Of a stretch of DNA of 64,000 nucleotides, positions 2 through 63,981 are shown one piece after another. How positions within the stretch are numbered: the stretch's first letter is position 1; each line of letters opens with the position of its first letter. The translations under genes were made by a program, and so were the position numbers. The notes under the pieces were generated by a model. It saw nothing but the letters and a program-made list of their open reading frames with translations, did no database searches and had not been told where the DNA came from. The DNA is taken from positions 248,001 through 312,000 of the IMG/VR virus record IMGVR_UViG_3300024999_000030; one strand, given 5' to 3'.

Positions 2-232
2 ACAAAGCTCGGTGGTGGTGGTGGCACGGACTTTCGGCCCGTGTTTGATTTCTATGAGAAGAAGAATGTGCGCCCGGCCTGTTTAGTTTACTTTACTGAC
101 GGCTATGGGACCTTCCCGAAGGAGCCTCCCGACTACGATGTTATCTGGTGCGTGGTTCCTGGTGGGGTTGGCCCCGACCAGGTTCCTTGGGGTGTTTACG
201 TCCGGACTGAATTCGACAAGGACGAAGAGTAA
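2..232 (+). CDS. C-terminal part of a vWA-like (DUF2201-type) protein, truncated by the window start
   Basis: Frame is open from base 2: TKLGGGGGTDFRPVF...LVYFTDGYG...VIW. GGGT-D-F and FTDG are the vWA motifs also seen at 12652 and 28032. Confidence 0.8.
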   Translation, partial: TKLGGGGGTDFRPVFDFYEKKNVRPACLVYFTDGYGTFPKEPPDYDVIWCVVPGGVGPDQVPWGVYVRTEFDKDEE

Positions 233-239
233 GGAGATG

Positions 240-267
240 AAAGAGGCCCCAGAAATGGGGCCTCTTT
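240..267 (+). terminator. Rho-independent terminator
   Basis: AAAGAGGCCCCA-GAAA-TGGGGCCTCTTT: 12-bp perfect stem with a GAAA tetraloop, just after the stop at 232. Confidence 0.85.
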
Positions 268-280
268 ACTGTTCCAAGAA

Positions 281-511
281 ATGAATATTAAAAATAATTG
301 GGCAACTAGATGTGGATATATACTTGAAATACCCTGGTATAAACATATATATTATTCTTTGAAAATACCCGCTACGATTGATTATGGATTTGTTTCTAAG
401 TCTACCTGGCCCGGAAACCATAATATTGGATTTTATACAGTATATTATGATGGCTGGCATTGGACTTTTCATATTTTGAATTTTTATATTTCAGCGAGTG
501 GATACGACTGA
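281..511 (+). CDS. hypothetical protein
   Basis: 76-aa ORF rich in aromatic residues; no recognised motif. Confidence 0.45.
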   Translation: MNIKNNWATRCGYILEIPWYKHIYYSLKIPATIDYGFVSKSTWPGNHNIGFYTVYYDGWHWTFHILNFYISASGYD

Positions 512-512
512 A

Positions 513-660
513 TTGTCTGTTAGCCGGTCCATTAACCAGAAGATGGCTATGGGGATCGCGTAGACAAAGAGGAGTCCGTTAAAGACAGGGGCGCCCCCGA
601 GGTCCTCGGACCAACCGAGCGGGTTCCGAAGCGCCAGGTCCACAAGAACGATATCCCCAG
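513..660. ncRNA. putative structured non-coding RNA of unknown class
   Basis: GC-rich intergenic island with several complementary segments: TTGTCT513/AGACAA562, TAGCC521/GGCTA545, TGGGGAT550/ATCCCCA653, GGCGC590/GCGCC631, CTCGG605/CCGAG615. Confidence 0.5.
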
Positions 661-693
661 TAATGTTTAAATTTTAGAAAGGAAAAATAAAAC

Positions 694-882
694 ATGTCTG
701 ACCGGTTTATTTATAGTTCCACAGGAGCGGTTCGATACCGCGTTTCGGACCAAGGGGGTAGTATCTTTATATACAACGCTCAAGGTCAATTGGCGTACAG
801 ATATGATAGAGCCACTGACACCACTTATGATGAGACAGGTAAGATAGCTATGCGTGGTTCTATTTTACCAGACCTAACATGA
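694..882 (+). CDS. small hypothetical beta-strand-rich protein
   Basis: SD AAAGGA upstream; internal repeat IYSSTG/IYNAQG/TYDETG. Confidence 0.65.
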   Translation: MSDRFIYSSTGAVRYRVSDQGGSIFIYNAQGQLAYRYDRATDTTYDETGKIAMRGSILPDLT

Positions 883-1076
883 GAGCGATGTGGTGGGGGT
901 ATCTTCATGAAAATGGAACCATCCAAGTGAAAAGATGGTTTGGTGATAATGCGGATTATACTAAAGATTGCCAAAACAATTCCTTTGTTAAGATAGTCAT
1001 ATCTCCATTTGTGGCAGAGAGCCGAGAGAAGGCTATACAGATTGTCATTGAAAAATTAGGATTGGAGAAAAAATAA
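879..1076 (+). CDS. hypothetical protein
   Basis: ATGA overlap with the previous gene; FVAESREKA motif typical of small phage proteins. Confidence 0.7.
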   Translation: MRAMWWGYLHENGTIQVKRWFGDNADYTKDCQNNSFVKIVISPFVAESREKAIQIVIEKLGLEKK

Positions 1077-2020
1077 TGCCTAAAACAGTAACCTGTTTTG
1101 CCTGCAAAGAATGTTTAGAAAACTATACAACTTTTAGAAAGGCAGCTAACTGTGAGAAAAAACACGCCACACAAAAAATAGCCGAACAATCTATAGAACA
1201 AGCATATAAAAATAAGCTGGCTATATCGGATGAGGTTAGACTTAATTCTTCTAGCCTTTGTGAAATAGAAATTAATTTAATTAAATGGATGGAAAAACAC
1301 CATAATCTTCGTTTATCTTTTAAACAAGGAATTGAATCCCTAACTATGGGATGGATAAGTAATTCTCATAATTTCCCCATCAATGGAAAAACTAATTGGT
1401 GCGGTGGGGAGGGGGGACCTAATGGCTACATTGGTTGGAACGGAGAAATCCGGGGTACTTTAAAATCTTTAAGTGGGAAACAATTCGAAAAATATGGTAT
1501 ATATGATATTCTTAGTGATCGTTTTGGTAACAACGAGGAAGCAACACTTAGGGGAATTAATTTAGGTTCCGGGGGCGGGTACAACGAATCTTTTACTTAT
1601 AATTGTAAAATATTTGTTGATGATTTTCCCATTTTAAAAGAAAAGGCTTCTTTAGTTATTACCCAATGGAAACTTAGAAAAAATTATAACAATGAGGTCA
1701 AAAGATTAGATGAAAGCTATCAATGTGGGGTGAAGGATTTATGTAAAATTAATCCTGATCATATGATAGCTGCAAATAGATTGGACAAAGTTGTTTATGA
1801 ACAAAAATTACTAGCCGACGAAAGAGAAAAATTGATAAATAAACTCGCTAATATTAAAGAAAATATTAAGAAACAAGTTCTTGCCGAAAATGAAAATATT
1901 TTACAACCTGACCCCAATAAATTTAAATTTCAATCAAAATTATTTGATGAACTAACTTATGACCTTAATTGTAATTATAATGTGGACTCGGCGTTGTCCG
2001 AAATTATAAGTAAACTTTAA
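1076..2020 (+). CDS. hypothetical protein with N-terminal CxxC and C-terminal coiled coil
   Basis: 314-aa ORF coupled to the previous gene by TAATG. Confidence 0.75.
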   Translation: MPKTVTCFACKECLENYTTFRKAANCEKKHATQKIAEQSIEQAYKNKLAISDEVRLNSSSLCEIEINLIKWMEKHHNLRLSFKQGIESLTMGWISNSHNFPINGKTNWCGGEGGPNGYIGWNGEIRGTLKSLSGKQFEKYGIYDILSDRFGNNEEATLRGINLGSGGGYNESFTYNCKIFVDDFPILKEKASLVITQWKLRKNYNNEVKRLDESYQCGVKDLCKINPDHMIAANRLDKVVYEQKLLADEREKLINKLANIKENIKKQVLAENENILQPDPNKFKFQSKLFDELTYDLNCNYNVDSALSEIISKL

Positions 2021-6918: not shown

Positions 6919-6936
6919 AAGTTTAAAGGAGTATAA

Positions 6937-17230: not shown

Positions 17231-17386
17231 AATGACTAATGATATTTTTAATACTTATTTATCGGTTGAAGATTTCCAAAAAACACATGAACTAAGCATT
17301 AAGAGTACCTGGAAAATATATGAATTAAACATATCGGAAGATCCAAATCTATATACTTTTGGTGCTATGATGAAACGGATTATTAA

Positions 17387-38101: not shown

Positions 38102-38790
38102 AAGAGTTTGCATATGTAGTTTCCAGACTCAAAACAGCCGCTCAACAAACCGGTGAAACTTGCTATATAGTTGGTGGAGCCGTGAGAGATATAATATCTC
38201 TTAAGAAGATTAAGGATGTTGATACGGTGGTGGCAATAAATCCTGAAAAATTTGCCTCAGCATTAGCCTCTACAACGGAGGGAGCAACCGCAGAAGAGGT
38301 TCATGCTCCATTTCCATTGTGGTCAGTGGATATTAGCGACGTGTCTGTAGATGTAGTTGGGTTAAGAGGAAAGAGTCTTCAAGAAGATATTCAACATAGA
38401 AATTTTACTATCAATACAATATACTATGACGTAGTAAGAGATAGGTTTGAAGATCCAACTGGAAAAGGGTTTACTGATCTTTATAATGGAGTAATTAATA
38501 CTGTTACTCCAGATTCTTTTGTTTTTTTTAGTTCTAGTCCACATGAAATTAATAGCATATTTATAGCAATAAGATTAGTAGCGGATTCCGGATTTAAATT
38601 AAGTGAACAATTAAAAAGCGGAATTAGGAAAGCCTTAGAGCATGGCCTCATTCCCGCTGAGTTATCTAAGAGATCTAAAAAGGAAATACTAAGAACTAGG
38701 CTTTCACATAATTTTAAGACCAAAGCTCTCCCCATAATTGAAGAGCTTGGTTTGGAGCATTTTTATGAAGCTGCCGCTGTTTCTCCATAA
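38098..38790 (+). CDS. divergent tRNA nucleotidyltransferase/poly(A) polymerase-family protein
   Basis: YIVGGAVRD, KDVD, EDIQHRNFTIN, DPTGKG-x2-DL. The flexible loop is deleted and the EDxxR motif is absent. Confidence 0.85.
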   Translation: MKEFAYVVSRLKTAAQQTGETCYIVGGAVRDIISLKKIKDVDTVVAINPEKFASALASTTEGATAEEVHAPFPLWSVDISDVSVDVVGLRGKSLQEDIQHRNFTINTIYYDVVRDRFEDPTGKGFTDLYNGVINTVTPDSFVFFSSSPHEINSIFIAIRLVADSGFKLSEQLKSGIRKALEHGLIPAELSKRSKKEILRTRLSHNFKTKALPIIEELGLEHFYEAAAVSP

Positions 38791-52298: not shown

Positions 52299-53040
52299 CC
52301 TTCATAGAGATTATTTTATGAGACGTGGGTATAGTTCTGACGCTATGGATTCTTTTAGTGTCGGAACTTTTCCCTTAGATTTAATTGTTGCCTCATTAAA
52401 CTGTAATCAGTTAATTAATCTTAAGATTTTATACGCACCTAAGCCAGGTTCCACATTATATTATTCGGAGTTCAGGGATAGAATTATTATTCCAGTACAT
52501 GATGCATATGGTAAGGTAGTGGGTATTACTGGGAGATTGTTAACAGAGGATCCAAATAGAGGTAAATATTACAACAGCGATTACCCAAAGGTATCTACAT
52601 TATTTAATTTACATAGAGCTAAAAATGAAATTATAAAATCTGGATATGCCGTAGTAGTAGAGGGTAATTTAGATGTGGTGGCTATGTGGGATGCCGGAAT
52701 TAAAAATGTTGTGGCCTGTACTGGGGCATTTATTACTCCAAAGCAAGTTCGTAAGTTACTTAGGTATACCGATAAAGTTTTAGTGGCAACTGATAACGAT
52801 AATGCAGGTCACGCTTCTTATACTAAGTTTCTTAAAAATTCAGCGTATTATATTGAAAACAAATCGCTTAGCTCTATTAGAATTATTCCTCCATTCGGCT
52901 TAAAAGATCCAGATGATTTTATTAAAAAATATGGAGCTAACACATGTCGGGAGTGGGTTGCCGCAGGCGCCCGGCATCTCACATGCAACGATGGCAACGA
53001 TACTACTAGCTTCAAAGGAGTGTGGAATGTCTGTAAATAA
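52243..53040 (+). CDS. dnaG: DnaG primase catalytic/TOPRIM core lacking the zinc-binding domain
   Basis: FRDRIIIP, GR, KYYNS, VVEGNLDV, DNDNAG, KDPDD. Confidence 0.92.
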   Translation: MCLDPISKLVELCHANLSNLHRDYFMRRGYSSDAMDSFSVGTFPLDLIVASLNCNQLINLKILYAPKPGSTLYYSEFRDRIIIPVHDAYGKVVGITGRLLTEDPNRGKYYNSDYPKVSTLFNLHRAKNEIIKSGYAVVVEGNLDVVAMWDAGIKNVVACTGAFITPKQVRKLLRYTDKVLVATDNDNAGHASYTKFLKNSAYYIENKSLSSIRIIPPFGLKDPDDFIKKYGANTCREWVAAGARHLTCNDGNDTTSFKGVWNVCK

Positions 53041-53617
53041 AGGACGCAGTAAGCGTTATCAATATAAGTTTAGAGAAATACCAGTGGAATCTATGGATGT
53101 TTTTTCCGATAACATGGCCCTTCACAATGCAGAAAATATATCTAGTGCACAAAAACAAAAGCAAAAAGAAGGAATTCTAGGTGCTATTTTTGAAATAGCA
53201 GACGAACAATTAACACAAAGACAAAAAGATATTTTGTATTGTAGATATGTTTTGGGCTTAACTCAGGTTGAAATAGGTAAGCGACTCGGAATTACTCAGA
53301 GTTGTGTTTCCCTTCAAATTAATGGTATTCCTAATTATACTTATTCTAAGAAACATGGTGGAATTTTACCTAAGCTTAAGAAAATGTGTGTTGGAGAAGC
53401 GGCTGTTGCCTCTGGGTCGGCTACAACTGAAGAGACAGACGCCCTTCTTAAAACAATCAAGAGTAGAATTAAAAAAGCTCATCCCGAATATACAGAAATA
53501 GATTTAACTAGAAAGGCAGTAGAGAGCTTATCAAACATGGGGAAAATATCAGATTTATTTGAAATGTTAGTTAAAGATGACATTGAGTATGACGAAGAGG
53601 ATCTTTCTCACACATAA
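53027..53617 (+). CDS. sigma-70 region 4-type HTH protein
   Basis: LTQRQKDILYCRY-x2-GLTQVEIGKRLGITQSCVS; SD AAGGAG before ATG 53027. Confidence 0.8.
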   Translation: MSVNKGRSKRYQYKFREIPVESMDVFSDNMALHNAENISSAQKQKQKEGILGAIFEIADEQLTQRQKDILYCRYVLGLTQVEIGKRLGITQSCVSLQINGIPNYTYSKKHGGILPKLKKMCVGEAAVASGSATTEETDALLKTIKSRIKKAHPEYTEIDLTRKAVESLSNMGKISDLFEMLVKDDIEYDEEDLSHT

Positions 53618-53651: not shown

Positions 53652-53678
53652 GAGCCATATTCTTTTGTGGAGGACACA

Positions 53679-54167
53679 ATGGGCTACTGGGAAGAGTTAG
53701 ATAAAATTGTAAAAAGAAGTACTGACAGGCAGGTAGAAGGGGGCCCTATTAATTTAAAGATTGGGTCTGAACTACCTGTCGATCAGTTTAATCTATATTT
53801 TGTTAAGACTGCTTTTGATCTTTGGCAGCTTGATCCAAACGTACAAATGGACGATGCATACTGGCGACTAGATAAGGATCGTGGTTGCTTTGTAAAGCTT
53901 TATGAGGGCCAAGCAGAATCACACGATCACCGCTGGAGTGTATATGCGGACAATGATAATGATAAGATTTCTGTAGCATACAAGGGTGATGCCATTGCCA
54001 CCATGGAGCTTAAGAGTTTTGGTTTCGGCGCGGGCATCGATTTAATTACTATTAAACGCAGTCTACTTAAATTATTAAGCACTAAAGAGGGACAGGATTC
54101 TGTTCTTAGTCTTGTAGCAGAAACTGAGCGTAAATTAATTACTCGCAAATATCCTGAGTTGTCATAA
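53679..54167 (+). CDS. hypothetical protein (putative virion/late)
   Basis: SD GGAGG; FVKTA motif. Confidence 0.75.
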   Translation: MGYWEELDKIVKRSTDRQVEGGPINLKIGSELPVDQFNLYFVKTAFDLWQLDPNVQMDDAYWRLDKDRGCFVKLYEGQAESHDHRWSVYADNDNDKISVAYKGDAIATMELKSFGFGAGIDLITIKRSLLKLLSTKEGQDSVLSLVAETERKLITRKYPELS

Positions 54168-54175
54168 GAGATGAT

Positions 54176-55006
54176 ATGAGATTAACCACAGCTGAAACTA
54201 AAGCAGATATTTTTTTATTCCCCAGACTACAGCTTATTGCTGCTAATTTAGAATTACAGGGATTATTACAAGATTTATTACAAGTGGCTTTAGATAATGA
54301 AGTGGAAGCTGAGGTAGAGGTTCCAGAAGAGGAAGCGGTTATGTCGGAAGAAAATACAATTCCCAATGAAAAAGCTCCCACTGAAACTAAATCTGAGACC
54401 TCTTCTGATTTATTAAACGTTCCCTCTTCTGAACCTTCGATTATGGAAAACAAGAGTGCCACCATTCAGGGTAAAATTAAAACAGCTGTTCAAATGGAAT
54501 CAGCTTCTAAAGCTGAAGCAACAGATGCTTTAGCCAATGTGATAGTAAAATTAGCTAATTTATCAAAACAAATTGTTAGAGTTGTAGACGGGGCATCTGA
54601 AATAACATCTACCTTGGGACTAGAAGACGATGAAGAGTTTTCAAATAAAATGTTAAAAATTCTTATATCTGGTCTTTCTTCAAAGGGAAATAATACAGCT
54701 GTAAAGAATTTTCTTAATCTTAAGGATGCTCCTAACTCTGTTCCATCAGATTTATATATTGTTATCGATGATGTAATTAAACAATATTTTGAAAAATCTG
54801 ATCATAAAAAAGAAATTACGGGCCCCATTAGACAAATATTACAAAATGGATCAGCCCGAGCCCCCTCTGCTAGAGCCCTACATCAGCATTGGTTTTTGGT
54901 GAAACTTCAATCTGAACTTAGGAAAGTTATTAAATGGACACCATCCACTACACCAACTGAGGTAGCTCCAGAGAAGAAACCAGAAGTACTTGAGGGCAAT
55001 ATATGA
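54176..55006 (+). CDS. hypothetical protein (putative virion/late)
   Basis: Acidic linker; ENKSA, IKTA, VKLA motifs. Confidence 0.75.
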   Translation: MRLTTAETKADIFLFPRLQLIAANLELQGLLQDLLQVALDNEVEAEVEVPEEEAVMSEENTIPNEKAPTETKSETSSDLLNVPSSEPSIMENKSATIQGKIKTAVQMESASKAEATDALANVIVKLANLSKQIVRVVDGASEITSTLGLEDDEEFSNKMLKILISGLSSKGNNTAVKNFLNLKDAPNSVPSDLYIVIDDVIKQYFEKSDHKKEITGPIRQILQNGSARAPSARALHQHWFLVKLQSELRKVIKWTPSTTPTEVAPEKKPEVLEGNI

Positions 55007-55944
55007 AATACGATAAATTAATTAAGTTGTCTTTTTTATCTAGAAAGCTAGAGTTATTAAAATTAGCGGAACCAATGCCCGCAGTGTCGGCTACCCCTCC
55101 ACCTAAAAAAAATCCACAACTAACAGTCAAATTAATGCAAGCATTTAGTATGTTAAGTAGTTTGGCCGCCGGTGAGGATTTGAAAATTATTGAGCAGGGT
55201 ATAGCTAAAAACCCCACTTTAAAAGAGTCGTGGGATAGAGTTAAAGGCATGCAATCTAAAATGTCGGGCAGACCAGAAATAATGAAAGATATAGAAGAGG
55301 CTAATCGCTTAGCTGTAATTTTTTGGCAAGCATTAAATAATCTTGAAACTTTATCTGAAAAAGATGTAACTGCTAGAACAAATAAAATTAAAGACTCCGT
55401 AGAGGCTTTAAAGAAAAGTGTTAATGAAATTTTAAAAAAATCTGATACTAATTCTGCTGACAACAATGCTACCCTATCAATTATGTCAATACCAGCAACC
55501 CGTAAAACGTTGCAAGATATGGCGAAGATTTTAAATGCTAGTGGGGCGTTGGAAGATACTAGAACTAATGTTCTTAATGTCGTAGCTAAACCAGAATCTA
55601 AAACGGCGTTGGCTAACATTGCCACTGGAATAACGGCCACTGATATATTATCAAAAATTGAATCAGTGGATAAGCCATTGGAAAGAAAACCGATAAGCAC
55701 TAGAGTTCCAAGCTCTCGTACAAGAACAGAGGCAGAACCAAGAGCAAAATATAAATTTAAAGGAAAGGCGGCAGCAGCCCTTAATAATATATCTAAATGG
55801 TTTGATAATTATGCAAATTTAATTGCATCTAGTATTAGATCTAGTCAAACAGATAAACTTGTAAGAAGTGGGCTTGCCTCTAAGATAGGAGAGAATCAAG
55901 TCGACGCAGTTAAAAAAGAAATCAAAAAATTAACTGGCAAATAA
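55003..55944 (+). CDS. hypothetical protein (putative virion/late)
   Basis: Leader ending LLKLA followed by a Pro-rich linker. Confidence 0.75.
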   Translation: MKYDKLIKLSFLSRKLELLKLAEPMPAVSATPPPKKNPQLTVKLMQAFSMLSSLAAGEDLKIIEQGIAKNPTLKESWDRVKGMQSKMSGRPEIMKDIEEANRLAVIFWQALNNLETLSEKDVTARTNKIKDSVEALKKSVNEILKKSDTNSADNNATLSIMSIPATRKTLQDMAKILNASGALEDTRTNVLNVVAKPESKTALANIATGITATDILSKIESVDKPLERKPISTRVPSSRTRTEAEPRAKYKFKGKAAAALNNISKWFDNYANLIASSIRSSQTDKLVRSGLASKIGENQVDAVKKEIKKLTGK

Positions 55945-55957
55945 AATGGAGGATTAC

Positions 55958-57088
55958 ATGAGTAACAATATTTTTAGATTAGCTAGTAAACTGGCGGCGG
56001 CGTATAAGGAAATTCCTTATTCTGTCTTGAATCGCTTTCTATTAGAAAAGACAGCACAGTTCCCGCAAGATAGAGTTCTACAACACGCTGGCGCAATTAT
56101 TGAACGTCGCACAGCCAGTCAGCCTTTTGGGGTTATTACTGTTAAAGATTTAGATACTTTAATTGGTGAGTTGGCATCGTTTGGAGATACAAATCATACA
56201 CGTAATCTTTTTAGTGTATATTTAACCGAAGGGCCAGCTAACGCCCCTGCTCGTGCTGGTGAGGTTTTTACTGATGACACAAGAGAGATGAAAAATTCCA
56301 ATAAAGAAGTAGAAGATATTGCTCCTGTTGCTGGAGTAGATCCAAAAGAAATTTTTTCTGAATATACAATATCTCGCAAATATGATGCCCAGACCATAGC
56401 TAAGGGAGCGGATGTTGTTATGAGATCTGTTCAGGCTTCCTTTGGAGCAGTTCCAACTTCTATTAAATTTGCCAAGGATACAGAAAAGGGTGTTTCTTAT
56501 TTTGTTAAAGTTACGGCCAAAGTGGGTAAAATGGAAATTGAGGTCCCTATCGAGAAAACAACTATGGGATTTCATAAACCTATTTCTTTTTTATGTAAGT
56601 CCGCAGCAGAAGAGGTTATAGAATATACTCTTAATGCCGATGGCGCCGAGAAGGCCACTAATATTATCGAGCAACAAGCCTCTTTTACTTTTGATGCTTC
56701 TTGGTTGAAAATGAATTTTGCTGAATTACGTAGTGAAATGTTGAAGTCTGCCATAAAGAAAGATTATAAACAAGCAGAAGAAGCTATTCGTCTTATTGGT
56801 TCTAAATTTCCTACTATGATGAAAGCTATTCTTGATGATTTTCAACATGTCTTAGTGGCTTTTCAAAAAGCCGAGAATACTCATTTTTGCAATAAGTGTT
56901 CCTTTTATCAGCCAGCTGGGGTTAAGTCAGCCAGTGTTGATAATTACTGTGCAAGGCTAAGAGCTTCCACTAAGCAAATTGTGAAGTCCGCTAATCCAGA
57001 AGAATGTGAAATGCTAGGAGCTTCTATGAAGCGCACTATCCCTGGGTTTGAGGGAACAATAAGCACAAGCAATATCAAGCTTACTTAA
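55958..57088 (+). CDS. hypothetical protein (putative virion/late) with a C-terminal Cys cluster
   Basis: SKLA, EKTA, CKSA, LKSA, VKSA x2; SD GGAGG before 55958. Confidence 0.8.
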   Translation: MSNNIFRLASKLAAAYKEIPYSVLNRFLLEKTAQFPQDRVLQHAGAIIERRTASQPFGVITVKDLDTLIGELASFGDTNHTRNLFSVYLTEGPANAPARAGEVFTDDTREMKNSNKEVEDIAPVAGVDPKEIFSEYTISRKYDAQTIAKGADVVMRSVQASFGAVPTSIKFAKDTEKGVSYFVKVTAKVGKMEIEVPIEKTTMGFHKPISFLCKSAAEEVIEYTLNADGAEKATNIIEQQASFTFDASWLKMNFAELRSEMLKSAIKKDYKQAEEAIRLIGSKFPTMMKAILDDFQHVLVAFQKAENTHFCNKCSFYQPAGVKSASVDNYCARLRASTKQIVKSANPEECEMLGASMKRTIPGFEGTISTSNIKLT

Positions 57089-57100
57089 GTGGGAGCCGTT

Positions 57101-57421
57101 ATGAATAGTAAATTAGTGGTTGCCACTTTTATAATGGCTAATGAAGTTCCAGCTCCAGGAGAACTGGAGCATGATATGATTTATGGTCCCACTTCGGTTC
57201 AAACCAGAAACTGTCCAGATATGCATGGGGTTCCTATGCAATATATAGGAGAGGGAACATATGTAAATCCTATAACTGGCCAGGTATATGATTTTAAAAA
57301 TGGTTTTAGATTAGGAGATGAAATAATATCGCCAGCCAGTATAGAGGAACAACATATAGTGGATAATCCTTTTACTAATGGTGTCCCACATGACGTATAT
57401 ACATTTAGGAGACAGATGTAA
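57101..57421 (+). CDS. hypothetical protein
   Basis: TRNCPDMHGV...NPITGQVYDF. Confidence 0.7.
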   Translation: MNSKLVVATFIMANEVPAPGELEHDMIYGPTSVQTRNCPDMHGVPMQYIGEGTYVNPITGQVYDFKNGFRLGDEIISPASIEEQHIVDNPFTNGVPHDVYTFRRQM

Positions 57422-58182
57422 TGCGAGGCGCAAGTGTTGCTAGACATCCCGACATAGATCATATAATAAGGTTAGTTAAAGCCGGTCAAGGTGCACGCAA
57501 CATTACGAGTATTATTAATCGTAAATATGTAGCGGCTCCTAGATATCAAGTCAATTGGATTACCGTAAATGATTTTATTAAAAATTACTTACATTTAGAT
57601 AAAAAACAAAGAGAAGTTCTCCGGGCCGAAGCTAAGGCAAATGGAATGGTGGTCTCTAGTGGTCAAATGAAAGAATTAGCCATTCAATCAACCCTGAATC
57701 AAAAGACTGATATATTAGATATACAAGAGATATTAGCTGAGCGTGAGTTAGATGTTAAAGAAGAACTAGAAAAACTTTACGGTACAGCTCTTTCTGAAAT
57801 AGATTCGATTAATGCTAAAGTTACTTCAATGGGAGATAGGGATTTTGTTGCTGGTAAGGCCACTTTAATAGCAGCTATTGATCAGGTGCGAAAAATTATT
57901 GCGGATGTTAGAACTGATCAGTTGGAAGCTAAGCTATCTAAACATAATGACAATAATCAGGTTGTCTTAAATTTTAATCAAGTTAATGCTCACGTAGATG
58001 CTATTAAGCAAGCAGTGGTAGAAACATTTAGGGAGCAAGGTATGTTACAACAATTGCCAGATTTTCTTAATAAATTATCTGGTAAACTATCTAAGTTGAG
58101 CGAAGTTAAGGTTACAACGGCAACGGGAGAAACGGTTACAATTCAACGACAGAGTTTATCCAATGGAGGGCACGATGAATAA
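57421..58182 (+). CDS. HTH + coiled-coil protein, possibly terminase small subunit-like
   Basis: N-terminal HP-x4-I-x2-L-x3-G helix-turn-helix-like region followed by helical hairpins; function tentative. Confidence 0.4.
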   Translation: MRGASVARHPDIDHIIRLVKAGQGARNITSIINRKYVAAPRYQVNWITVNDFIKNYLHLDKKQREVLRAEAKANGMVVSSGQMKELAIQSTLNQKTDILDIQEILAERELDVKEELEKLYGTALSEIDSINAKVTSMGDRDFVAGKATLIAAIDQVRKIIADVRTDQLEAKLSKHNDNNQVVLNFNQVNAHVDAIKQAVVETFREQGMLQQLPDFLNKLSGKLSKLSEVKVTTATGETVTIQRQSLSNGGHDE

Positions 58183-59032
58183 AGCTGGGTATCCTCAGCC
58201 GACTACATATAATATGAATGAGTTTACAACTCAACCCACAGATTTAGAAAGATGGTCTGTGGCATATAAAAACATATGGAGGTTGGTTGAAATTACAGGC
58301 ACTCCGTTAGGACAAGCTAAGTCTATTATTTTGCGTGGATGGAAAGATACTGAGATTTCTAGATTTTCATCTTGGATGTCTTATTATGAAAATAAAGATG
58401 ACATTAAATATAAAAATGTAGATAAATTGAGTTATTTAGATTGTGATTTCAATATGATAAAACAGGCCGCGCTCAAGGTTGCTGATAACCAAAAATTGTC
58501 TACAGAAATGATTAGTCGTATTAAAGAAGCTAAAACAGTCCAAACTGTTGTTGATTTAATTTATGTGATGAAAAAAGATAAAGTAAAAACTGCAGCCGAA
58601 GAAGGCCCGCATAATAAAGAAAGAATGATGAAAATTTTTAATGTAGTTAGAGATGTTAATAATGAAGTGGCAAGAAAAAAGATAGTGCGTAACTTAGCTC
58701 GTGTCTTGTCAATGGATACAGAGGGTTTGTTTCCAGAAATTCCACAAGCGCTTTCTAAGCTTATTGATGCTTATTCATATTCCGCATCTCGAATTCAAGA
58801 TGTAATGAATAGACTTGGATTACAAATTAGTATGATTCCATCTGAAGACGATGGCGAAGAGGGAGAAAAAATTTCACCCGAGGAAGCTAAAGAGAGTTTT
58901 TTAGCTCCTAAAGAAAACAAAGAAAAGGCGAAACCATCTTCCGCTCCAACTCCCGCCATCGCCCCTTTAAATAAACCTTCAACGAAACCAGAAACGCCAA
59001 TTATTCCCAGACCAGAGAATAGAGGGGTATAA
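58175..59032 (+). CDS. hypothetical protein (putative virion/late)
   Basis: IKQA, LKVA, IKEA, VKTA; Pro-rich tail. Confidence 0.78.
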   Translation: MNKAGYPQPTTYNMNEFTTQPTDLERWSVAYKNIWRLVEITGTPLGQAKSIILRGWKDTEISRFSSWMSYYENKDDIKYKNVDKLSYLDCDFNMIKQAALKVADNQKLSTEMISRIKEAKTVQTVVDLIYVMKKDKVKTAAEEGPHNKERMMKIFNVVRDVNNEVARKKIVRNLARVLSMDTEGLFPEIPQALSKLIDAYSYSASRIQDVMNRLGLQISMIPSEDDGEEGEKISPEEAKESFLAPKENKEKAKPSSAPTPAIAPLNKPSTKPETPIIPRPENRGV

Positions 59033-60684
59033 TGAAAGACGATATTAAAGGGCCCATGGATATAGACATTAATGACGCATCAAATTCTCCCCCAATTGCG
59101 GACACCACAATGATTGGGGGTGGCGATGATAATGTTCTTCCGTTGGACACTGACGTGAGAAAGTTAAAAATAAAACTACGAAAGATGGCAGAAGCGGATG
59201 AACCATCAAAGAAAACATCTGTATTAGGTGACGATTTATTATATGCTAAAATATATGCTCCCTTTGATGATATGGTATCTAAAACTGTTATTTTTTTCTC
59301 TTCAGACAGATTCAAAAATATTATAGATAATGATATATCATTATCTAATCACATAAGAGAAACATATGAAACTATAGAAAAAATTAGAAAACCTCAAGCC
59401 CAAAACGCAGACGTGTCTAAGTATTGGTTTATGGGGACAATAAGTAAGGTATTTAAAGCCTATGTTGATTCGGTAGATGTTAAATCTAAATCTATGTTTT
59501 CAAATGCTAATATAGCAAGTGGTATGTTGTCAACTCTTATTGAAAAACATCATGACCCCGAAGCAGGAAGTTTATATGCGGGGGGAATGGAGGAGAATGC
59601 AATCGGGTCAGCTAAGCATGTTCTTGAATTGATTAAAGATCTTAATCCACAAGAACTTGTTCAAAATGCTTTATTACATCACGCCTTTGCTAGATTATTA
59701 TATATTTATGTAACGTATCAGTGGTTCAGTTCACTTAAACGTTTGGAAGGTGGGCTATCATCTATCTATCCTACGGCTACTTTAATGTCAGTTAAATCAA
59801 AAAGAAAAATTATTTCCACTATTCAAATGGCGCTTGACTCTGCCGGATTTCTACGCCCACCTAAACCCTGGCCCTCTTCAGTGTCAGACGTTAGAATTAT
59901 ATCCTCTAAAGCTTATGAAGTTTTGGGAGATTTTCCATTTTTAGGTGTTGCTATTGATAATGATGTAGCGGTGGCCCTTGAGCGTGCTTCTAAAATTAAA
60001 GCCATAGAATTTCTTCAAAGTAATTATGATAACATTATACTAGAAAGAAAAGACAGAAAAGGAAAAGTAATATATGATAAATCTTTTTTTGACGATGTTA
60101 GTCAAATAGAAGAGATTAAAAAACAAGATAAACTTTTAATATATATGAAAATAGTAAATCAAATTTTAGCAATAAAATTACCAGAACTGTTAGATATCAA
60201 TAGATATAATTTTAAAGAAAGTCGCCTCGCTCCTAGGGCACATACCCTGAGCACTATGAAGGCTATTTCCACATTACTTTCAGCGGTTAAAACTCGTCCC
60301 CTCGCGGAAAATAAAATTGACGAGTATTCCACGTTTATTATGCAATTGATATGGGCAAAAATCCAATATGATTGGCGTACCTCTATGCAAGATTCTGATA
60401 TAATTGATTCTCCTGTGTTTGTTTCTTTAGATAAAGCTGTTTATCACGAATCTAAAGCCAGTCGAGCTAGATTTAATTTCTTTTTTAATCAACAAACAGC
60501 CCCTAAGCAAGACAAAACCATAGACACGGAGTGGTCAAAAACAGTTGTATACTCAGATAGAACAGATAAATCTTTTAATACAGCGGCAACCTGGAAGGAG
60601 ACACATCCCCTAAAACCAGAAATAAAAATACAAGATGTGGACTTAGTCGGATTGTTTAATTCAATGCTGAAAGAATTGAGGTGA
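59032..60684 (+). CDS. hypothetical protein (putative virion/late)
   Basis: Acidic leader ending LRKMA; 550 aa. Confidence 0.8.
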   Translation: MKDDIKGPMDIDINDASNSPPIADTTMIGGGDDNVLPLDTDVRKLKIKLRKMAEADEPSKKTSVLGDDLLYAKIYAPFDDMVSKTVIFFSSDRFKNIIDNDISLSNHIRETYETIEKIRKPQAQNADVSKYWFMGTISKVFKAYVDSVDVKSKSMFSNANIASGMLSTLIEKHHDPEAGSLYAGGMEENAIGSAKHVLELIKDLNPQELVQNALLHHAFARLLYIYVTYQWFSSLKRLEGGLSSIYPTATLMSVKSKRKIISTIQMALDSAGFLRPPKPWPSSVSDVRIISSKAYEVLGDFPFLGVAIDNDVAVALERASKIKAIEFLQSNYDNIILERKDRKGKVIYDKSFFDDVSQIEEIKKQDKLLIYMKIVNQILAIKLPELLDINRYNFKESRLAPRAHTLSTMKAISTLLSAVKTRPLAENKIDEYSTFIMQLIWAKIQYDWRTSMQDSDIIDSPVFVSLDKAVYHESKASRARFNFFFNQQTAPKQDKTIDTEWSKTVVYSDRTDKSFNTAATWKETHPLKPEIKIQDVDLVGLFNSMLKELR

Positions 60685-60687
60685 TAA

Positions 60688-63195
60688 ATGTCTAATATTT
60701 TAATTGCTGAGGATAAAACCGCTCCCTCGTATGTAGAACAATTTAATTCTAAGATTGCTATAGATGTAGATCAAGCAGGACAATATAGTGGACTTAAGGT
60801 TTTATCTTCTGGTAAAGATTATTTTATTATGACTCGCTCATCTAGATCGGAAGATATAACCGTTAATCTTATTTTAACAATAATGTCTGGAAATTTTAGC
60901 GGCTCCTCAATTAAAAGAATGGAAAGAGTTTCTCCAATGGTCCCCGGGACCCAACGTCTATCAGACCAAAAAATAGACACAACTTCAACCAATGTGTTTA
61001 AATCTACAGTAGGTGTGGCCCTGAATGATATTTATATGAGGGCAATTGGAATGCATAAGGTTTTATCTGGAGAAGATGTAAACCTTTCTCCTCTTGGTGG
61101 TAAATCTATAAAAGATGAAATTGAGGAATCAAGAAGAGAGGTATCACAATTATTACAAAGTTATCTTCAAATATATAATAAACCATTAGGTTCAGTTTCA
61201 ATTGATGTTAATGAAATTTTATCTTTTGCAATGGCTAAGTATGCAATTGAATTGGAAAATTTAGCTATGCAAAATCTCAATAGTTTAATGATGCCAATTA
61301 TGAGTAATGTTATAATTCCAGAAGCAAAAAAACTCACTAAAGATTTAGTTAACAAAACAATTCAAGAGTGGAAAGATGGTATTAAATCTGGAGATCCAAG
61401 AGAGATTTTGGGATCATCAGACTATCAAGCTTTAAGTTCCAATCTCTTTAAGCCCCTAGAGAACATGTATAGAGATATGGTAGTATCAGCTAACAAATCT
61501 GCGGATGTTATGATTAGTGTTGTTGAAAGAGTAACGGATGGATATAGCAAAGCTTTAGATAGCGTAATTAAAGAAGGTATTGATAATTATTTTATTTCTT
61601 CGACTCTTAAATTAGCCACAGATTCTGCATTACAACCAAGTGTTATACATATGGTTTCTCAATATTCATCGATAAATGCAGTAGCACAGGCAATTCCCCG
61701 AGCAGCTAAGGTTTTTTTCCATGCCATAGATGACAAAGTAAAAAACACTTCTGGCGAAAATAAATCGTGGAATGTTGTTAATATAGCTCCACATTTGATT
61801 CAAACAAAACCAATGGATACTTTTCAGGATAGGGCTATGGCTGCTTCTCCATCGGTAAACTTATTATCATTAACTAAAACAGCTGCCCTTGAACTTATGG
61901 CTAATGGAAAAATTAATGATGCTTTGGTGGTTACTAAAATAGCAGCGAATTTATCCCGAGCTGATAATTTCAGTACAGATAATCTTAATTTACTTTATTT
62001 TGCTTTACAGGCAGTGGATAGTATAAGTACGGGAGAGGGAGGAAGAGCTATTAAATTGACGGGTATTGTTTCTGGTCGTGCTAAAATAGGAGACTCTATT
62101 CGCAAAATAGCTTTTCCATTAACTAAAAACATTCCTATTCTACAAGACAATCTGAGAGTTATGACGAGTATAGATAAAGTAGTTTTAATGTTGGAAGTAA
62201 AAGATGAAATGCTTAAAGAATACAGTGAGGCTATAATGGCCACCCTTGACTTAGACTCAGTTAGAAAGAAAGAATTAAGTCAATTTGGGGAGTGGGGACA
62301 ATTTGGTAAAGATGGAATAATGCTTAGAACTTGTCAGTCTGTAGCGGATATTATAGAGGTTTTACAAGAGTTATTTATTATATCTACGGCCATTGCTGTG
62401 GGACCATATGGTAAAGATTTATTGATTTCTTTATCTGCTGCTAAACAGATGGAAGATTTAGATGAAAGAAGACAAAGTTTAGCTACTGAAGTTAAAAAAT
62501 CTATAGATTGGTATAGTGCAACAGTTCAAAAACATAAGGGTCAACTTCCTCAATCAGCTTATACAAAAGACTGGATGAGTCAATTAAGGGCCCACACGAT
62601 TACTTCTATGCGGGATATAGATGATTACTATAATAGTGTATATATACCTTCCCTTGAGGCTGTGAGAGAGGCTGGCGCCTACATGGGACAGCTTATGAGG
62701 TCTGGTAATTTACCAAATAGTTTTGCTCAATTGGTGTATGCAAAAGTTAGGTCTCAAACATTCGACTCTTGCCCATTCGGTTTAATAATTCCAAAGGGGT
62801 GTCAGTCGGCTGGGAGATTTATTGATAAATTAGATCCTGTTTTGCAAAATGATAAAGAGGAAGAGGCTGCTAAAAAAGAAGCAAGTAATAGATATAAATT
62901 ACATGAAGCAATAGAGGACAGTAAAATTGAACCTTGTAAATGTAAATATTTACGTTCCCTTATGGAAGAACATAATGTACCCTCAGTGGTGTGTAATTGG
63001 GGAGAGGGGGACGGATTAGGACACGATTCAATCGATTTTACTGAAGGTTTAGGAGCATACTATCCGAACACCTTCATGAGTGGCTTGTTCAGTTTGCCGT
63101 CTGCTTTGGGCCCAGAGGGTCGTGAATCTTGGTTTGCTAGGTCACCCGGCACCACCCCATTTGGGCAGACCTCATGGACGACTCCCGGCCTATAG
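60688..63195 (+). CDS. large hypothetical protein (putative virion/late)
   Basis: 835 aa; LTKTA, VTKIA, IRKIA; C-terminal CPFG...GC...CKC...C cluster. Confidence 0.8.
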   Translation: MSNILIAEDKTAPSYVEQFNSKIAIDVDQAGQYSGLKVLSSGKDYFIMTRSSRSEDITVNLILTIMSGNFSGSSIKRMERVSPMVPGTQRLSDQKIDTTSTNVFKSTVGVALNDIYMRAIGMHKVLSGEDVNLSPLGGKSIKDEIEESRREVSQLLQSYLQIYNKPLGSVSIDVNEILSFAMAKYAIELENLAMQNLNSLMMPIMSNVIIPEAKKLTKDLVNKTIQEWKDGIKSGDPREILGSSDYQALSSNLFKPLENMYRDMVVSANKSADVMISVVERVTDGYSKALDSVIKEGIDNYFISSTLKLATDSALQPSVIHMVSQYSSINAVAQAIPRAAKVFFHAIDDKVKNTSGENKSWNVVNIAPHLIQTKPMDTFQDRAMAASPSVNLLSLTKTAALELMANGKINDALVVTKIAANLSRADNFSTDNLNLLYFALQAVDSISTGEGGRAIKLTGIVSGRAKIGDSIRKIAFPLTKNIPILQDNLRVMTSIDKVVLMLEVKDEMLKEYSEAIMATLDLDSVRKKELSQFGEWGQFGKDGIMLRTCQSVADIIEVLQELFIISTAIAVGPYGKDLLISLSAAKQMEDLDERRQSLATEVKKSIDWYSATVQKHKGQLPQSAYTKDWMSQLRAHTITSMRDIDDYYNSVYIPSLEAVREAGAYMGQLMRSGNLPNSFAQLVYAKVRSQTFDSCPFGLIIPKGCQSAGRFIDKLDPVLQNDKEEEAAKKEASNRYKLHEAIEDSKIEPCKCKYLRSLMEEHNVPSVVCNWGEGDGLGHDSIDFTEGLGAYYPNTFMSGLFSLPSALGPEGRESWFARSPGTTPFGQTSWTTPGL

Positions 63196-63240
63196 TATAT
63201 TAATAAGTTTATATCTAAATTGCAATGTTGGAGGAGTAAA

Positions 63241-63981
63241 ATGAAATATGAGATTGCCACTGATCTTCAGGTAAAGAGCGAAGCTAAAGAGCCTGTTGTC
63301 GCAGCAGAACTTTCTATTAACGATAAAATAAAGAAAGAAGCTTCTGGCCGCCACGTTTATGATGTAGACTCTGCTAGTGGGAAAGAGGCATACGGTAGAA
63401 GTCTTGATTCCGCTATTGAATTTCTGTGGGAAAAGGTAAATCGTAGTGTTGACGTGAGGGCAGATAATAAACTCTCTATTCAACGTGCAGCTAGCTATTA
63501 TGGTGAAATTGATAAGGCTATTTCTACCATCGTTCGTTCTGATGTAGCTGGTATAATGTCTAATGAAGATCTATCTAAGTTTGAAGAAATCCGCATTGCT
63601 ATTAATAAAAAACATGAGGATGTTCTTAAAACCGCATTAGCAGTACACAACAAACCATCTAACGATGAGTGTTTGGAATGTGGTACGTTACTATATGGCG
63701 GTAAATGCATTGCCTGTGAGGGTGATGGCGATATGGTTAAAGAGGCAGGTTCCCCCGCATTACAATTCTTTGAGAGTGGTTTTATTGTTGGAGTTGCCAC
63801 CGACATTATGAATTATGTTGTTACTTCAGGTATGAACTTAACTGATGCGGTTAACACTGCCAAAGAATCATTCGGACTTACAAAACGTGAGGAATATCGT
63901 TTGCGTAAATATCTTAACTATATGGGAATGGTTGCGCCGCAAATGATTTGGCTTCCTCCTTCGGAAACTAGATTTTCTTAA
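63241..63981 (+). CDS. hypothetical protein (putative virion/late)
   Basis: SD GGAGGAG; IKKEA, VLKTA, MVKEA; the last two bracket a CLEC...CIAC zinc ribbon. Confidence 0.8.
   Translation: MKYEIATDLQVKSEAKEPVVAAELSINDKIKKEASGRHVYDVDSASGKEAYGRSLDSAIEFLWEKVNRSVDVRADNKLSIQRAASYYGEIDKAISTIVRSDVAGIMSNEDLSKFEEIRIAINKKHEDVLKTALAVHNKPSNDECLECGTLLYGGKCIACEGDGDMVKEAGSPALQFFESGFIVGVATDIMNYVVTSGMNLTDAVNTAKESFGLTKREEYRLRKYLNYMGMVAPQMIWLPPSETRFS

What the first reader, a model, noticed from the sequence alone, without database searches (positions are those of the whole stretch)
53679..63981. Recurring hydrophobic-x-K-x-A motif across a block of unannotated proteins: putative prohead-protease or packaging signal
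Seen: FVKTA (53679); NKSA, IKTA, VKLA (54176); LLKLA ending the leader (55003); SKLA, EKTA, CKSA, LKSA, VKSA x2 (55958); IKQA, LKVA, IKEA, VKTA (58175); LRKMA ending an acidic leader (59032); LTKTA, VTKIA, IRKIA (60688); IKKEA, VLKTA, MVKEA (63241). They often precede low-complexity linkers or bracket small domains. The same motif marks the 38-42 kb enzymes. Inference: a cleavage code analogous to (L/I)-x-E in T4 and (S/A/G)-x-E in phiKZ but ending in Ala, marking this block as head/inner-body proteins. I could not compute enrichment.
Basis: partly seen in the sequence, partly recalled or inferred. Interest (0 to 1): 0.72.

Follow-up and report, generated by a model that had tools for sequence, protein, structure and literature searches.

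The report
Candidate head-protease cleavage motif K-T-A
A short motif ending in alanine (leucine/methionine-x-lysine-threonine/valine-alanine, often then serine) is over-represented in the head-assembly genes of this uncultured 333-kb phage, of phage G and of about 50 relatives. It also sits at conserved junctions of their herpesvirus-like head protease, so it is probably that protease's cutting site, though no cleavage has been measured.

Summary
The strings are present and the enrichment is real but modest. In the ten ORFs, K-x-A is 36 observed against 25 expected. With a hydrophobic residue one or two places before K it is 26 against 12. The sharp core is K-[ST]-A, 14 against 3.5. That is the best of about 4,000 patterns scanned, and only 1.6% of shuffles match it.

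The signal replicates independently.
- In Bacillus phage G, KTA is the top tripeptide of the syntenic head region (11 against 1.6).
- Across 53 non-redundant related head loci, K-x-A is the top a-x-b pair and KTA the top tripeptide. Scrambled controls sit near 1.0.

The clade's prohead protease (phage G gp19 family) has an assemblin/T4 gp21-like fold. Its N-terminal junction carries invariant K-T/S-A. Eleven of 23 protease–scaffold fusions, this phage's included, carry [KR]-[TV]-A-S about 45 residues from the C-terminus, much like the herpesvirus M-site.

It remains unproven:
- many block sites lie inside predicted helices or strands;
- most sites are poorly conserved;
- major capsid protein, portal and the giant ORF are not enriched;
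- no proteomic data exist.

The claims about linkers and the 38–42 kb enzymes are not supported.

The parts
52913..53617 (+). Sigma-70 region-4-like gene directly upstream of the block. It marks the start of the syntenic module (phage G: sigma gp3, then gp4-gp13).
   Evidence: Pfam Sigma70_r4 E 1e-9. The same gene order is seen in L014, L016, L018, L019 and phage G.
53667..54167 (+). ORF of 166 aa with no known family. One K-T-A site (FVKTA, nt 53805-53813), kept in the two relatives that have the gene.
54176..55006 (+). ORF of 276 aa with an acidic N-terminal region. Four K-x-A sites, including NKSA (nt 54452-54460) and IKTA (nt 54479-54487); poorly conserved.
55003..55944 (+). ORF of 313 aa. 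Three K-x-A sites (expected 4.2): LLKLA at residue 20 and SKTA (nt 55600-55608).
55946..57088 (+). ORF of 380 aa (likely start at residue 5). It is the main carrier of the motif: nine K-x-A (expected 3.6) and five K-[ST]-A (expected 0.5), at nt 56048, 56597, 56744, 56924 and 56984. It has a CxxC...C...C module, 113 remote homologs, and a weak fold match to phage G gp7.
57089..57421 (+). ORF of 110 aa; no K-x-A site.
57421..58182 (+). ORF of 253 aa. Its one site, IKQA (residue 196), has K and A invariant even in homologs about 20% identical.
58163..59032 (+). ORF of 289 aa with a Pro-rich C-terminal tail. Four K-x-A sites clustered at residues 100-145, including VKTA (nt 58586-58594).
59032..60684 (+). 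ORF of 550 aa. One K-x-A site (LRKMA, residue 51; expected 3.8). The leader that carries it is missing in the most distant relative.
60688..63195 (+). ORF of 835 aa. Nine K-x-A sites (expected 4.4), including DKTA at residue 10 (nt 60715-60723), NKSA (nt 61495-61503) and LTKTA (nt 61876-61884); mostly not conserved.
63220..63981 (+). ORF of 253 aa (likely start at residue 8) with a Cys-rich zinc-ribbon-like stretch. Four K-x-A sites (expected 1.9), including VLKTA (nt 63628-63636). KKEAS and MVKEA are conserved in all three relatives.

Best explanation
The recurring motif is the recognition site of the phage's own prohead (capsid-maturation) serine protease.

The enzyme is a homolog of phage G gp19 with a herpesvirus-assemblin/T4 gp21-type fold. 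Here it is encoded as a 947-aa protease-scaffold fusion that runs across the junction of the circular contig (genome 330871..332730 + 133..1116).

The inferred consensus is [L/M]-x-[K/R]-[T/V/S]-A, often followed by S. By analogy with assemblins, the cut would fall after the Ala.

The ten window ORFs occupy the position of phage G gp4-gp13, between the late sigma-like gene and the packaging and head genes. They are inferred to be head-assembly or internal proteins that the protease trims or degrades during maturation. The same enzyme would process itself at its N-terminal junction (FKSA) and release its scaffold tail at RVKVA|S, 45 residues from the C-terminus.

Shown: the enrichment, its replication across the clade, the homology and fold of the protease, and the conserved junction and tail motifs.
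Inferred: that any site is cleaved, the position of the scissile bond, and the virion location of the block proteins.
For: 1. Block enrichment that survives composition, local-window and hydrophobic-class shuffles. K-[ST]-A is 14 against 3.5, the best of about 4,000 patterns, family-wise 0.016. The block is the genome-wide maximum.
2. Pre-specified test in phage G, whose proteins in this region show no detectable similarity to the block. The 0-20 kb head bin has K-[ST]-A 15 against 4.2 (p 3e-5), K-x-A 58 against 31.9 and K-x-A-[SN] 18 against 4.7, the top of 25 bins each time. The rest of the genome sits at expectation. KTA is the rank-1 tripeptide there, 11 against 1.6, reached by 0.5% of shuffles.
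3. Fifty-three non-redundant IMG/VR loci around protease homologs. K-x-A is first of 400 pairs (z 11.8) and KTA the first tripeptide.
   - With proteases excluded: KTA 90 against 46.8, K-x-A 1083 against 870 (42 loci up, 10 down), K-x-A-S 123 against 54. Scrambled controls give 0.74-1.18.
   - Counting each protein family once: ratios 1.79, 1.22 and 1.94. Singleton proteins: KTA 25 against 13.2.
4. Protease. Own-genome hit to the gp19 profile at E 8e-40. The model's top PDB matches are herpesvirus assemblins (probability 0.92-0.99) and T4 gp21 (0.98). A His and a Ser are invariant. K and A of h-K-T-A are invariant in 43 sequences, with KSA in this phage. The site lies in a low-confidence stretch before the first core strand. 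All 17 sequences that align at this junction (the roughly 300-aa proteases plus this phage's own) carry [KR]-[TS]-A.
5. Eleven of 23 fusion proteases of 600 aa or more, this phage's included, have [KR]-[TV]-A-S in the last 60 residues. The expectation is 0.1-0.2 and no shuffle of 500 reaches it. The site is often exactly 45 residues from the end.
6. Assemblins are protease-scaffold fusions that cut after Ala, for example YLQA-T and VQA-S in pseudorabies virus, the latter removing 37 C-terminal residues (PMC4498786).
Against: - No proteomic or biochemical evidence for any cleavage.
- In the AlphaFold model of the 380-aa ORF (pLDDT 61), the sites in the confidently modelled parts lie in helices or strands of folded domains, and two more fall in a low-confidence Cys-rich module.
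- Site conservation is only slightly above background (50 against 37.3 kept, similar to K-x-L). It is absent in 110 remote homologs. Thirteen of 23 K-[ST]-A columns are unique to one genome.
- Two remote syntenic blocks, L018 and L019, show no K-[ST]-A excess, 4 against 3.1 and 4 against 2.3. Their protease type is unknown.
- This phage's major capsid protein, portal, large terminase and the 3,988-aa ORF are not enriched (19 against 28.5 for the last).
- This block lacks the Ser preference after Ala: my own tally of the sites listed gives 3 K-x-A-S of 36 K-x-A sites, about 2 expected, and the genome shows no K-x-A-[SN] excess.
- Sites are not concentrated at N-termini (8 of 90 in the first 30 aa).
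- The effect size is modest (1.2-2x), so most individual sites could be chance. Phage G gyrase A has three.
- L-x-K-x-A also fits d-to-a spacing in coiled coils.
Confidence: 0.55

Rival explanations
1. The clade-wide motif is a real protease or scaffold signal, but the excess in this window's ten ORFs is mostly inherited or chance sites that are never cut. On this reading the block proteins are not protease substrates.
For: Half of the block's excess comes from one protein, with 5 K-[ST]-A. Sites lie in predicted helices or strands. KTA alone has a family-wise p of 0.16 in the block. Three ORFs are at or below expectation. There is no independent evidence that the block proteins are in the virion.
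Against: K-[ST]-A is family-wise significant in the block, which is the genome-wide maximum. The syntenic but sequence-unrelated phage G genes gp4, gp7, gp11 and gp13 carry the same excess. Each relative has gained sites of its own.
Confidence: 0.15
2. The pattern is a structural by-product. Lys/Ala-rich amphipathic helices or coiled coils in assembly proteins give h-x-K-x-A (heptad d-to-a spacing) without any signal function.
For: Genome-wide, h-K-x-A is 1.26x over shuffles. The other top patterns in the block are also hydrophobic-polar-x-hydrophobic. A shuffle that keeps the hydrophobic pattern removes about 40% of the excess. Sites map to helices in the model. K-x-L sites are as conserved as K-x-A sites.
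Against: The excess of K-[ST]-A is unchanged by class-preserving and 12-40-residue window shuffles, z about 5. Thr or Ser in the middle and Ser after Ala are not helix-favouring. Scrambled or neighbouring controls (ATK, KAT, TKA, KTV, ETA, A-x-K) are near 1.0. The conserved protease-junction and C-terminal [KR]-[TV]-A-S sites lie in non-core, low-confidence regions.
Confidence: 0.15
3. The motif is functional but is not a cleavage site. It could be a capsid-targeting or scaffold-docking peptide, a recognition element for the phage-encoded ClpP or trigger-factor chaperone system, or a lysine-modification site.
For: The genome encodes a trigger-factor-like protein and a cellular-type ClpP. The invariant residue is a Lys.
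Against: The positions match assemblin release and maturation sites, at the protease junction and about 45 residues from the scaffold C-terminus (PMC4498786). Sites are not N-terminally biased, as T4-type targeting sequences are. I know of no K-T-A degron or docking motif.
Confidence: 0.1

Closest known systems
Herpesvirus assemblin (pUL26 / UL80a family) with its release (R) and maturational (M) sites
   Same: It is the best structural match to this phage's protease model. The enzyme is fused to a scaffold. P1 is Ala, often with Ser at P1'. One site lies at the protease boundary and one a few tens of residues from the scaffold C-terminus: 37 aa in pseudorabies virus (PMC4498786), 45 aa here.
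   Different: The inferred motif here has Lys/Arg at P3 and Thr/Val/Ser at P2. The candidate junction site is N-terminal of the core, not only C-terminal. The motif is also enriched in many other head-module proteins. The virus is bacterial, nothing has been shown experimentally, and sequence similarity to assemblins is undetectable.
T4 gp21, phiKZ gp175 and SPN3US gp245 prohead proteases with their L/I-x-E, S/A/G-x-E and A-x-E motifs
   Same: Same fold class (5JBL probability 0.98). A three-residue code marks many head and internal proteins, with redundant multiple sites per substrate (PMC9026906, PMC10052503).
   Different: Those enzymes cut after Glu; here the motif ends in Ala. The Pfam Peptidase_S77 model finds nothing in this genome. 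In those phages the processed propeptides are mostly N-terminal, whereas sites here are spread along the proteins.
Bacillus phage G gp19, annotated as a head maturation protease
   Same: Direct homolog: profile E 8e-40, about 30% identity. It shares the invariant K-T/S-A junction and the His and Ser. It was detected in phage G particles (PMC12484599). The same motif excess occurs in the neighbouring head genes.
   Different: gp19 is a stand-alone 300-aa protein, whereas this phage's enzyme is a 947-aa fusion with a scaffold-like tail. I could find no published cleavage specificity; the phage G structure paper, PMC7316594, was not readable here.
HK97 gp4 (Peptidase_S78)
   Same: A capsid-maturation serine protease encoded between portal and capsid genes.
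   Different: The Pfam S78 model does not match this genome even at E 1.

Membership tests
Phage G gp19-type prohead protease (assemblin-fold serine protease) | Sequence homology to the gp19 family | tested here: met
   A profile of 13 gp19 homologs hits genome 331027-331767 at E 8e-40 with no stops. Alignments A7 and A8 show 41 invariant columns.
Phage G gp19-type prohead protease (assemblin-fold serine protease) | Assemblin / T4 gp21 fold | tested here: met
   AlphaFold model with core pLDDT 85-91. The Foldseek PDB top hits are HCMV, PrV, HSV-1, EBV, VZV and KSHV proteases (probability 0.92-0.99) and T4 gp21 5JBL (0.98). E-values are only 4e-3 to 3e-2 and TM-scores 0.2-0.4.
Phage G gp19-type prohead protease (assemblin-fold serine protease) | Catalytic His and Ser conserved | tested here: inconclusive
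   His142 and Ser193 (own numbering) are invariant, and His219 nearly so, in 42 sequences. Their catalytic role and geometry were not examined.
Phage G gp19-type prohead protease (assemblin-fold serine protease) | Encoded in the head module between the portal and major capsid genes | tested here: met
   Portal at 326562-329378, protease ORF from 330871 across the junction to 1116, capsid gene at 6205-7221.
Pfam Peptidase_S78 (HK97) / Peptidase_S77 (T4) | Match to the curated family model | tested here: not met
   No match at E up to 1 in the whole genome.
Prohead-protease cleavage code (as T4 L/I-x-E, phiKZ S/A/G-x-E) | Motif over-represented in head-module proteins relative to the rest of the genome | tested here: met
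   This genome: the 300-310 kb bin is the maximum. Phage G: the 0-20 kb bin is the maximum and the rest is at expectation. In 53 loci it ranks first, with scrambled controls near 1. This phage's capsid, portal and giant ORF are not enriched.
Prohead-protease cleavage code (as T4 L/I-x-E, phiKZ S/A/G-x-E) | Motif present at the protease's own processing or scaffold-release positions | tested here: met
   K-T/S-A is invariant at the N-terminal junction. [KR]-[TV]-A-S occurs in the last 60 aa of 11 of 23 fusions, against 0.1-0.2 expected. Only the presence of the sequence is shown, not cleavage.
Prohead-protease cleavage code (as T4 L/I-x-E, phiKZ S/A/G-x-E) | Mature virion proteins begin or end at the motif | not testable with these tools
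   The phage is uncultured. The phage G proteomics supplements are not held and the structure and proteomics paper is not held.
Prohead-protease cleavage code (as T4 L/I-x-E, phiKZ S/A/G-x-E) | Sites lie in accessible segments | tested here: inconclusive
   The protease junction site lies in a low-confidence stretch. The sites of the 380-aa ORF that fall in confidently modelled parts lie in helices or strands of a model with pLDDT 61.
Prohead-protease cleavage code (as T4 L/I-x-E, phiKZ S/A/G-x-E) | Site at a major-capsid-protein propeptide boundary | tested here: inconclusive
   This phage's capsid ORF has LLKEA at residue 65, just before the conserved core. Phage G gp27 has ISKAL there and starts only about 10 residues upstream.

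The most novel reading that the evidence does not exclude
Phage-G-like megaphages and many uncultured relatives use a maturation code with Ala at P1 ([L/M]-x-[K/R]-[T/V]-A|S). It would be read by an assemblin-fold protease that is often fused to its scaffold. If so, both the Ala|Ser specificity and the protease-scaffold architecture with a C-terminal release site, so far known from herpesviruses, are shared with tailed phages and may be ancestral in Duplodnaviria. The unannotated genes between the sigma-like gene and the portal would then be a hidden set of processed head-internal proteins.
Probability: 0.4. Interest if true: 0.8.

Novelty: new variant of a known kind. Interest (0 to 1): 0.68.

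Why it matters
Prohead-protease codes are known experimentally for only a few phage lineages, and the well-studied giant-phage ones all cut after Glu. A lineage-wide code ending in Ala has four consequences.

1. It would give a sequence rule for predicting processed head proteins and propeptides in phage G-like megaphages, where most head-region genes have no annotation.
2. It would tie the substrate specificity of phage and herpesvirus maturation proteases together, not only their fold.
3. It would flag protease–scaffold fusions with an M-site-like C-terminal release site in phages.
4. It is directly testable in a cultivable member, phage G, partly by re-searching existing mass-spectrometry data.

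Tried and rejected
- **DNA-level word** (methylation or restriction site): rejected, because codons at the 36 sites differ.
- **Local composition or low-complexity heterogeneity**: rejected, because 12-40-residue window shuffles leave the excess unchanged.
- **Hydrophobic periodicity alone**: explains only part of the excess.
- **Annotation of the ten ORFs.** Pfam and PHROGs gave no credible family. tblastn against 50,697 phage records found nothing for three block ORFs and one remote homolog. The megablast of the region found nothing. The ESM Atlas gave no usable hit. A profile search of PDB sequences with the 253-aa family found nothing.
- **Fold of the 380-aa ORF.** Only generic helical-hairpin and cystatin/NTF2-like matches. 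There is one weak viral match to phage G gp7.
- **Weak BLAST hit of the 550-aa ORF to the phage G portal** (E 0.006): rejected by profile-profile comparison, probability 0.1%.
- **Block profiles against the phage G 0-30 kb proteins and against this phage's proteome**: no homologs or paralogs.
- **First look for the protease.** PHROGs and Pfam on the ORFs between portal and capsid gene found nothing. My ORF caller missed the gene because it runs off the contig end. It was found only with a gp19 family profile.
- **Cellular-type ClpP** at genome 238933-239472: considered as the head protease and set aside, because it is far from the head genes and the gp19 homolog is present.
- **N-terminal leader idea** (K-[ST]-A within the first 25 residues): no genome-wide excess, 7 against 7.9 in phage G and 11 against 7.5 here.
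- **Handle search of the metagenome relatives** for the protease: those records are not held.
- **Structure prediction with the phage G gp19 row**: It was run with this phage's protein first instead.
- **Complex prediction** of the protease core (two copies) with this phage's last 70 residues: no verdict, score 0.10. This is not evidence either way.
Full report
**Setting**

The window is bases 248001-312000 of a 332,730-bp IMG/VR virus record (CheckV 100% complete, GC 38%). Nearly all genes are on the + strand. The contig ends overlap by exactly 126 bp, so the genome is circular or circularly permuted, about 332.6 kb.

- The major capsid protein (genome 6205-7221) is 54% identical to gp27 of Bacillus phage G.
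- The portal is at 326562-329378 and the large terminase at 324565-326547.
- A 3,988-aa ORF starts just after the window.

Upstream, the window holds replication genes: DNA polymerase III alpha, SbcC-like protein, RecA, primase. It also holds a trigger-factor-like gene, a topoisomerase IB/CCA-polymerase fusion and a sigma-70 region-4-like gene at 52913-53617.

The finding covers the ten + strand ORFs that follow, at 53667-63981. None has a credible Pfam or PHROG family or a relative among 50,697 phage records.

The order sigma-like gene, ORFans, packaging and head genes recurs in three close metagenomic relatives (L016, L014/L015, L017), in two remote ones (L018, L019), and in phage G as sigma gp3, gp4-gp13, portal gp14.

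Counts against per-protein shuffles are:

| Pattern | Observed | Expected | Note |
|---|---|---|---|
| K-x-A | 36 | 24.8 | z 2.4; 9th of 255 pairs |
| [ILVMF]-K-x-A | 17 | 7.0 | top of 133 pairs |
| [ILVMF]-x-K-x-A | 17 | 7.1 | top of 133 pairs |
| K-x-A with hydrophobic at -1 or -2 | 26 | 12.1 | z about 4 |
| same, hydrophobic-class or window shuffles | 26 | about 15.5 | z about 3 |
| K-[ST]-A | 14 | 3.5 | p 2e-5 |
| KTA | 8 | 1.4 | top tripeptide; family-wise p 0.16 |

K-[ST]-A is the best of all a-[class]-b patterns by two orders of magnitude, and only 1.6% of shuffled blocks give any pattern as extreme. By 10-kb bins the block is the genome-wide maximum.

The replication ORFs proposed as controls are not enriched. 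Nor are the 38-42 kb enzymes, at 13 against 10.3. The codons differ from site to site, so the signal is in the protein, not the DNA.

**First impression: weak and probably structural**

Several results argued against a signal.
- Site retention in orthologs is only 1.34x background, similar to K-x-L.
- In 110 remote homologs of the 380-aa ORF, none of its nine sites is a family hallmark.
- Thirteen of 23 K-[ST]-A alignment columns are unique to one genome.
- The remote syntenic blocks L018 and L019 are not enriched.
- This phage's capsid, portal, terminase and giant ORF are at or below expectation.
- In an AlphaFold model of the 380-aa ORF (pLDDT 61), the sites in the confidently modelled parts fall inside helices or strands. 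The low-confidence stretch at residues 93-140 has none at its edges.

**What changed the picture**

No S78 or S77 protease was found. I therefore built a profile of phage G gp19, which is annotated as a head maturation protease and was detected in particles (PMC12484599).

The gp19 family has an invariant h-K-T-A(-S) just before its conserved core.

The profile hits this genome at 331027-331767 with E 8e-40. My ORF caller had missed that gene because it runs over the contig junction. The ORF is 947 aa: an N-terminal protease domain plus a long, repetitive, scaffold-like tail.

In 43 aligned sequences the K and A of the junction motif are invariant, and this phage has FKSA.

The model has a core pLDDT of 85-91. 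It matches herpesvirus assemblins (probability 0.92-0.99) and T4 gp21 (0.98). The K-S-A lies in a low-confidence stretch before the first core strand.

Assemblins are protease-scaffold fusions that cut after Ala. In pseudorabies virus the sites are YLQA-T and VQA-S, and the second removes the 37 C-terminal residues that hold the capsid protein (PMC4498786). By contrast T4, phiKZ and SPN3US cut after Glu (PMC9026906, PMC10052503).

**Independent replication**

With the motif fixed in advance, I scanned the whole phage G genome in 20-kb bins. The 0-20 kb bin holds TerL, sigma, gp4-gp13, portal, gp15-gp18, protease gp19 and gp20-gp21.

| Pattern, phage G 0-20 kb | Observed | Expected | p |
|---|---|---|---|
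| K-[ST]-A | 15 | 4.2 | 3e-5 |
| KTA | 11 | 1.8 | |
| K-x-A | 58 | 31.9 | 2e-5 |
| K-x-A-[SN] | 18 | 4.7 | 2e-6 |

This bin is the top of 25 each time, and the rest of the genome sits at expectation. An unbiased scan of all tripeptides in that region puts KTA first, at 11 against 1.6 (p 1e-6), reached by 0.5% of shuffles. These phage G proteins have no detectable similarity to the window's block.

Three further gp19-lineage loci all lean the same way. K-x-A is 32 against 19.6, 32 against 24.8 and 47 against 23.3, the last with many K-x-A-S.

A scan of IMG/VR returned 65 loci around protease homologs, 53 of them non-redundant (737 ORFs, 231 kaa). K-x-A is the first of 400 a-x-b pairs (1466 against 1078) and KTA the first tripeptide (153 against 56.7).

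| 53 loci | KTA | K-x-A | K-x-A-S |
|---|---|---|---|
| proteases excluded | 90 / 46.8 | 1083 / 870 | 123 / 54 |
| each protein family counted once | 36 / 20.1 | 463 / 378 | 44.7 / 23.1 |
| singleton proteins | 25 / 13.2 | 303 / 256 | 25 / 15.2 |

With proteases excluded, K-x-A is above expectation in 42 loci and below in 10. The controls ATK, KAT, TKA, KTS, KTV, ETA and A-x-K give 0.74-1.18.

**The protease's own sites**

About half of the family's ORFs are fusions of 600 aa or more. Eleven of 23, including this phage's RVKVAS, carry [KR]-[TV]-A-S within the last 60 residues. The expectation is 0.1-0.2, and none of 500 shuffles reaches it. The site is often exactly 45 residues from the end, in several lineages that are otherwise only 10-15% identical. 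All 17 sequences that align at the N-terminal junction (the roughly 300-aa proteases and this phage's own enzyme) carry [KR]-[TS]-A there. This is the layout of assemblin release and maturational sites.

**Conclusion and limits**

The most likely reading (about 0.55) is that [L/M]-x-[K/R]-[T/V/S]-A(|S) is the recognition motif of this clade's assemblin-fold prohead protease. The window's ten ORFs would then be head-assembly or internal proteins that carry it.

Several points are inferred, not shown:
- cleavage itself;
- the scissile bond;
- the virion location of the block proteins, which rests on synteny and one weak fold match of the 380-aa ORF to phage G gp7.

The effect is modest (1.2-2x), so many individual sites are probably chance. 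The block lacks the Ser preference after Ala. Folded-domain sites may not be accessible.

Rival readings remain open:
- the motif is real but the block's sites are not substrates;
- the pattern is a helical-pattern by-product;
- the motif is a docking or targeting signal rather than a cleavage site.

A complex prediction of the protease with its own tail gave no verdict.

Noticed in passing
genome 330871-332730 + 133-1116 (outside the window; L020:1345-3204 and L001:133-1116): The contig ends overlap by exactly 126 bp. A 947-aa ORF runs across the junction: a gp19-type protease domain fused to a repetitive, acidic and Lys-rich scaffold-like tail. ORF callers that need a stop codon on a linear record miss it.
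   Followed up: yes
genome 326562-329378 (L009:14562-17378): The portal protein carries an insertion of about 340 aa (residues about 385-723) relative to phage G gp14. The insert matches PHROGs that contain intein or homing-endonuclease-bearing proteins, so it is probably an intein.
   Followed up: no
genome 312597-324563 (starts 597 nt after the window end; L009:597-12563): A giant 3,988-aa ORF lies between the block and the large terminase, with no PHROG match. It is conserved in relatives (3,881 aa in L014). K-x-A is depleted in it, 19 against 28.5.
   Followed up: partly
window 38098-42295: A 1,185-aa ORF fuses a poly(A)/CCA-polymerase head domain to a eukaryotic-type topoisomerase IB catalytic core. 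A separate 230-aa ORF with a second polymerase head domain precedes it.
   Followed up: no
window 43095-44378; genome 238933-239472: The phage encodes a trigger-factor-like protein and a cellular-type ClpP (E 1e-80), as phage G encodes ClpP and ClpX. This points to a phage-borne protein-quality-control set.
   Followed up: no
window 55946-57088 and L018:7180-9981, L019:4779-7736: The 380-aa ORF belongs to a family with 113 remote homologs, mostly about 520 aa, that share its C-terminal 230 residues. Its G-x-K-S-A-S-V...C element recurs in the 933-aa and 985-aa neighbours of remote relatives, and the fold search points to phage G gp7 (930 aa).
   Followed up: partly
L016:8962-9621 and L016:12880-15255: In the closest relative an HNH/NUMOD3 endonuclease gene splits the ortholog of the 253-aa ORF (window 57421-58182). 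The ortholog of the 835-aa ORF is also in three pieces. A GIY-YIG/HNH homing endonuclease likewise sits next to this phage's capsid gene (genome 7283-8281).
   Followed up: no
genome about 16400-17600 (L001): Short minus-strand ORFs translate to strings typical of spurious frames across tRNA genes, so a tRNA cluster is likely here. The window itself has no tRNA.
   Followed up: no
genome 37213-37725: A 170-aa ORF just before the tail genes has three K-[ST]-A sites (expected 0.36). This is the second-highest local density in the genome.
   Followed up: no
phage G 478-497 kb (L044, L045): The region just upstream of TerL in the phage G record has K-[ST]-A 6 against 2.0, with two small proteins carrying R-K-T-A at residues 6-7. 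gp13 and gp20 also have it within the first 10 residues. Four of the seven N-terminal occurrences in phage G lie in or next to the head region.
   Followed up: partly
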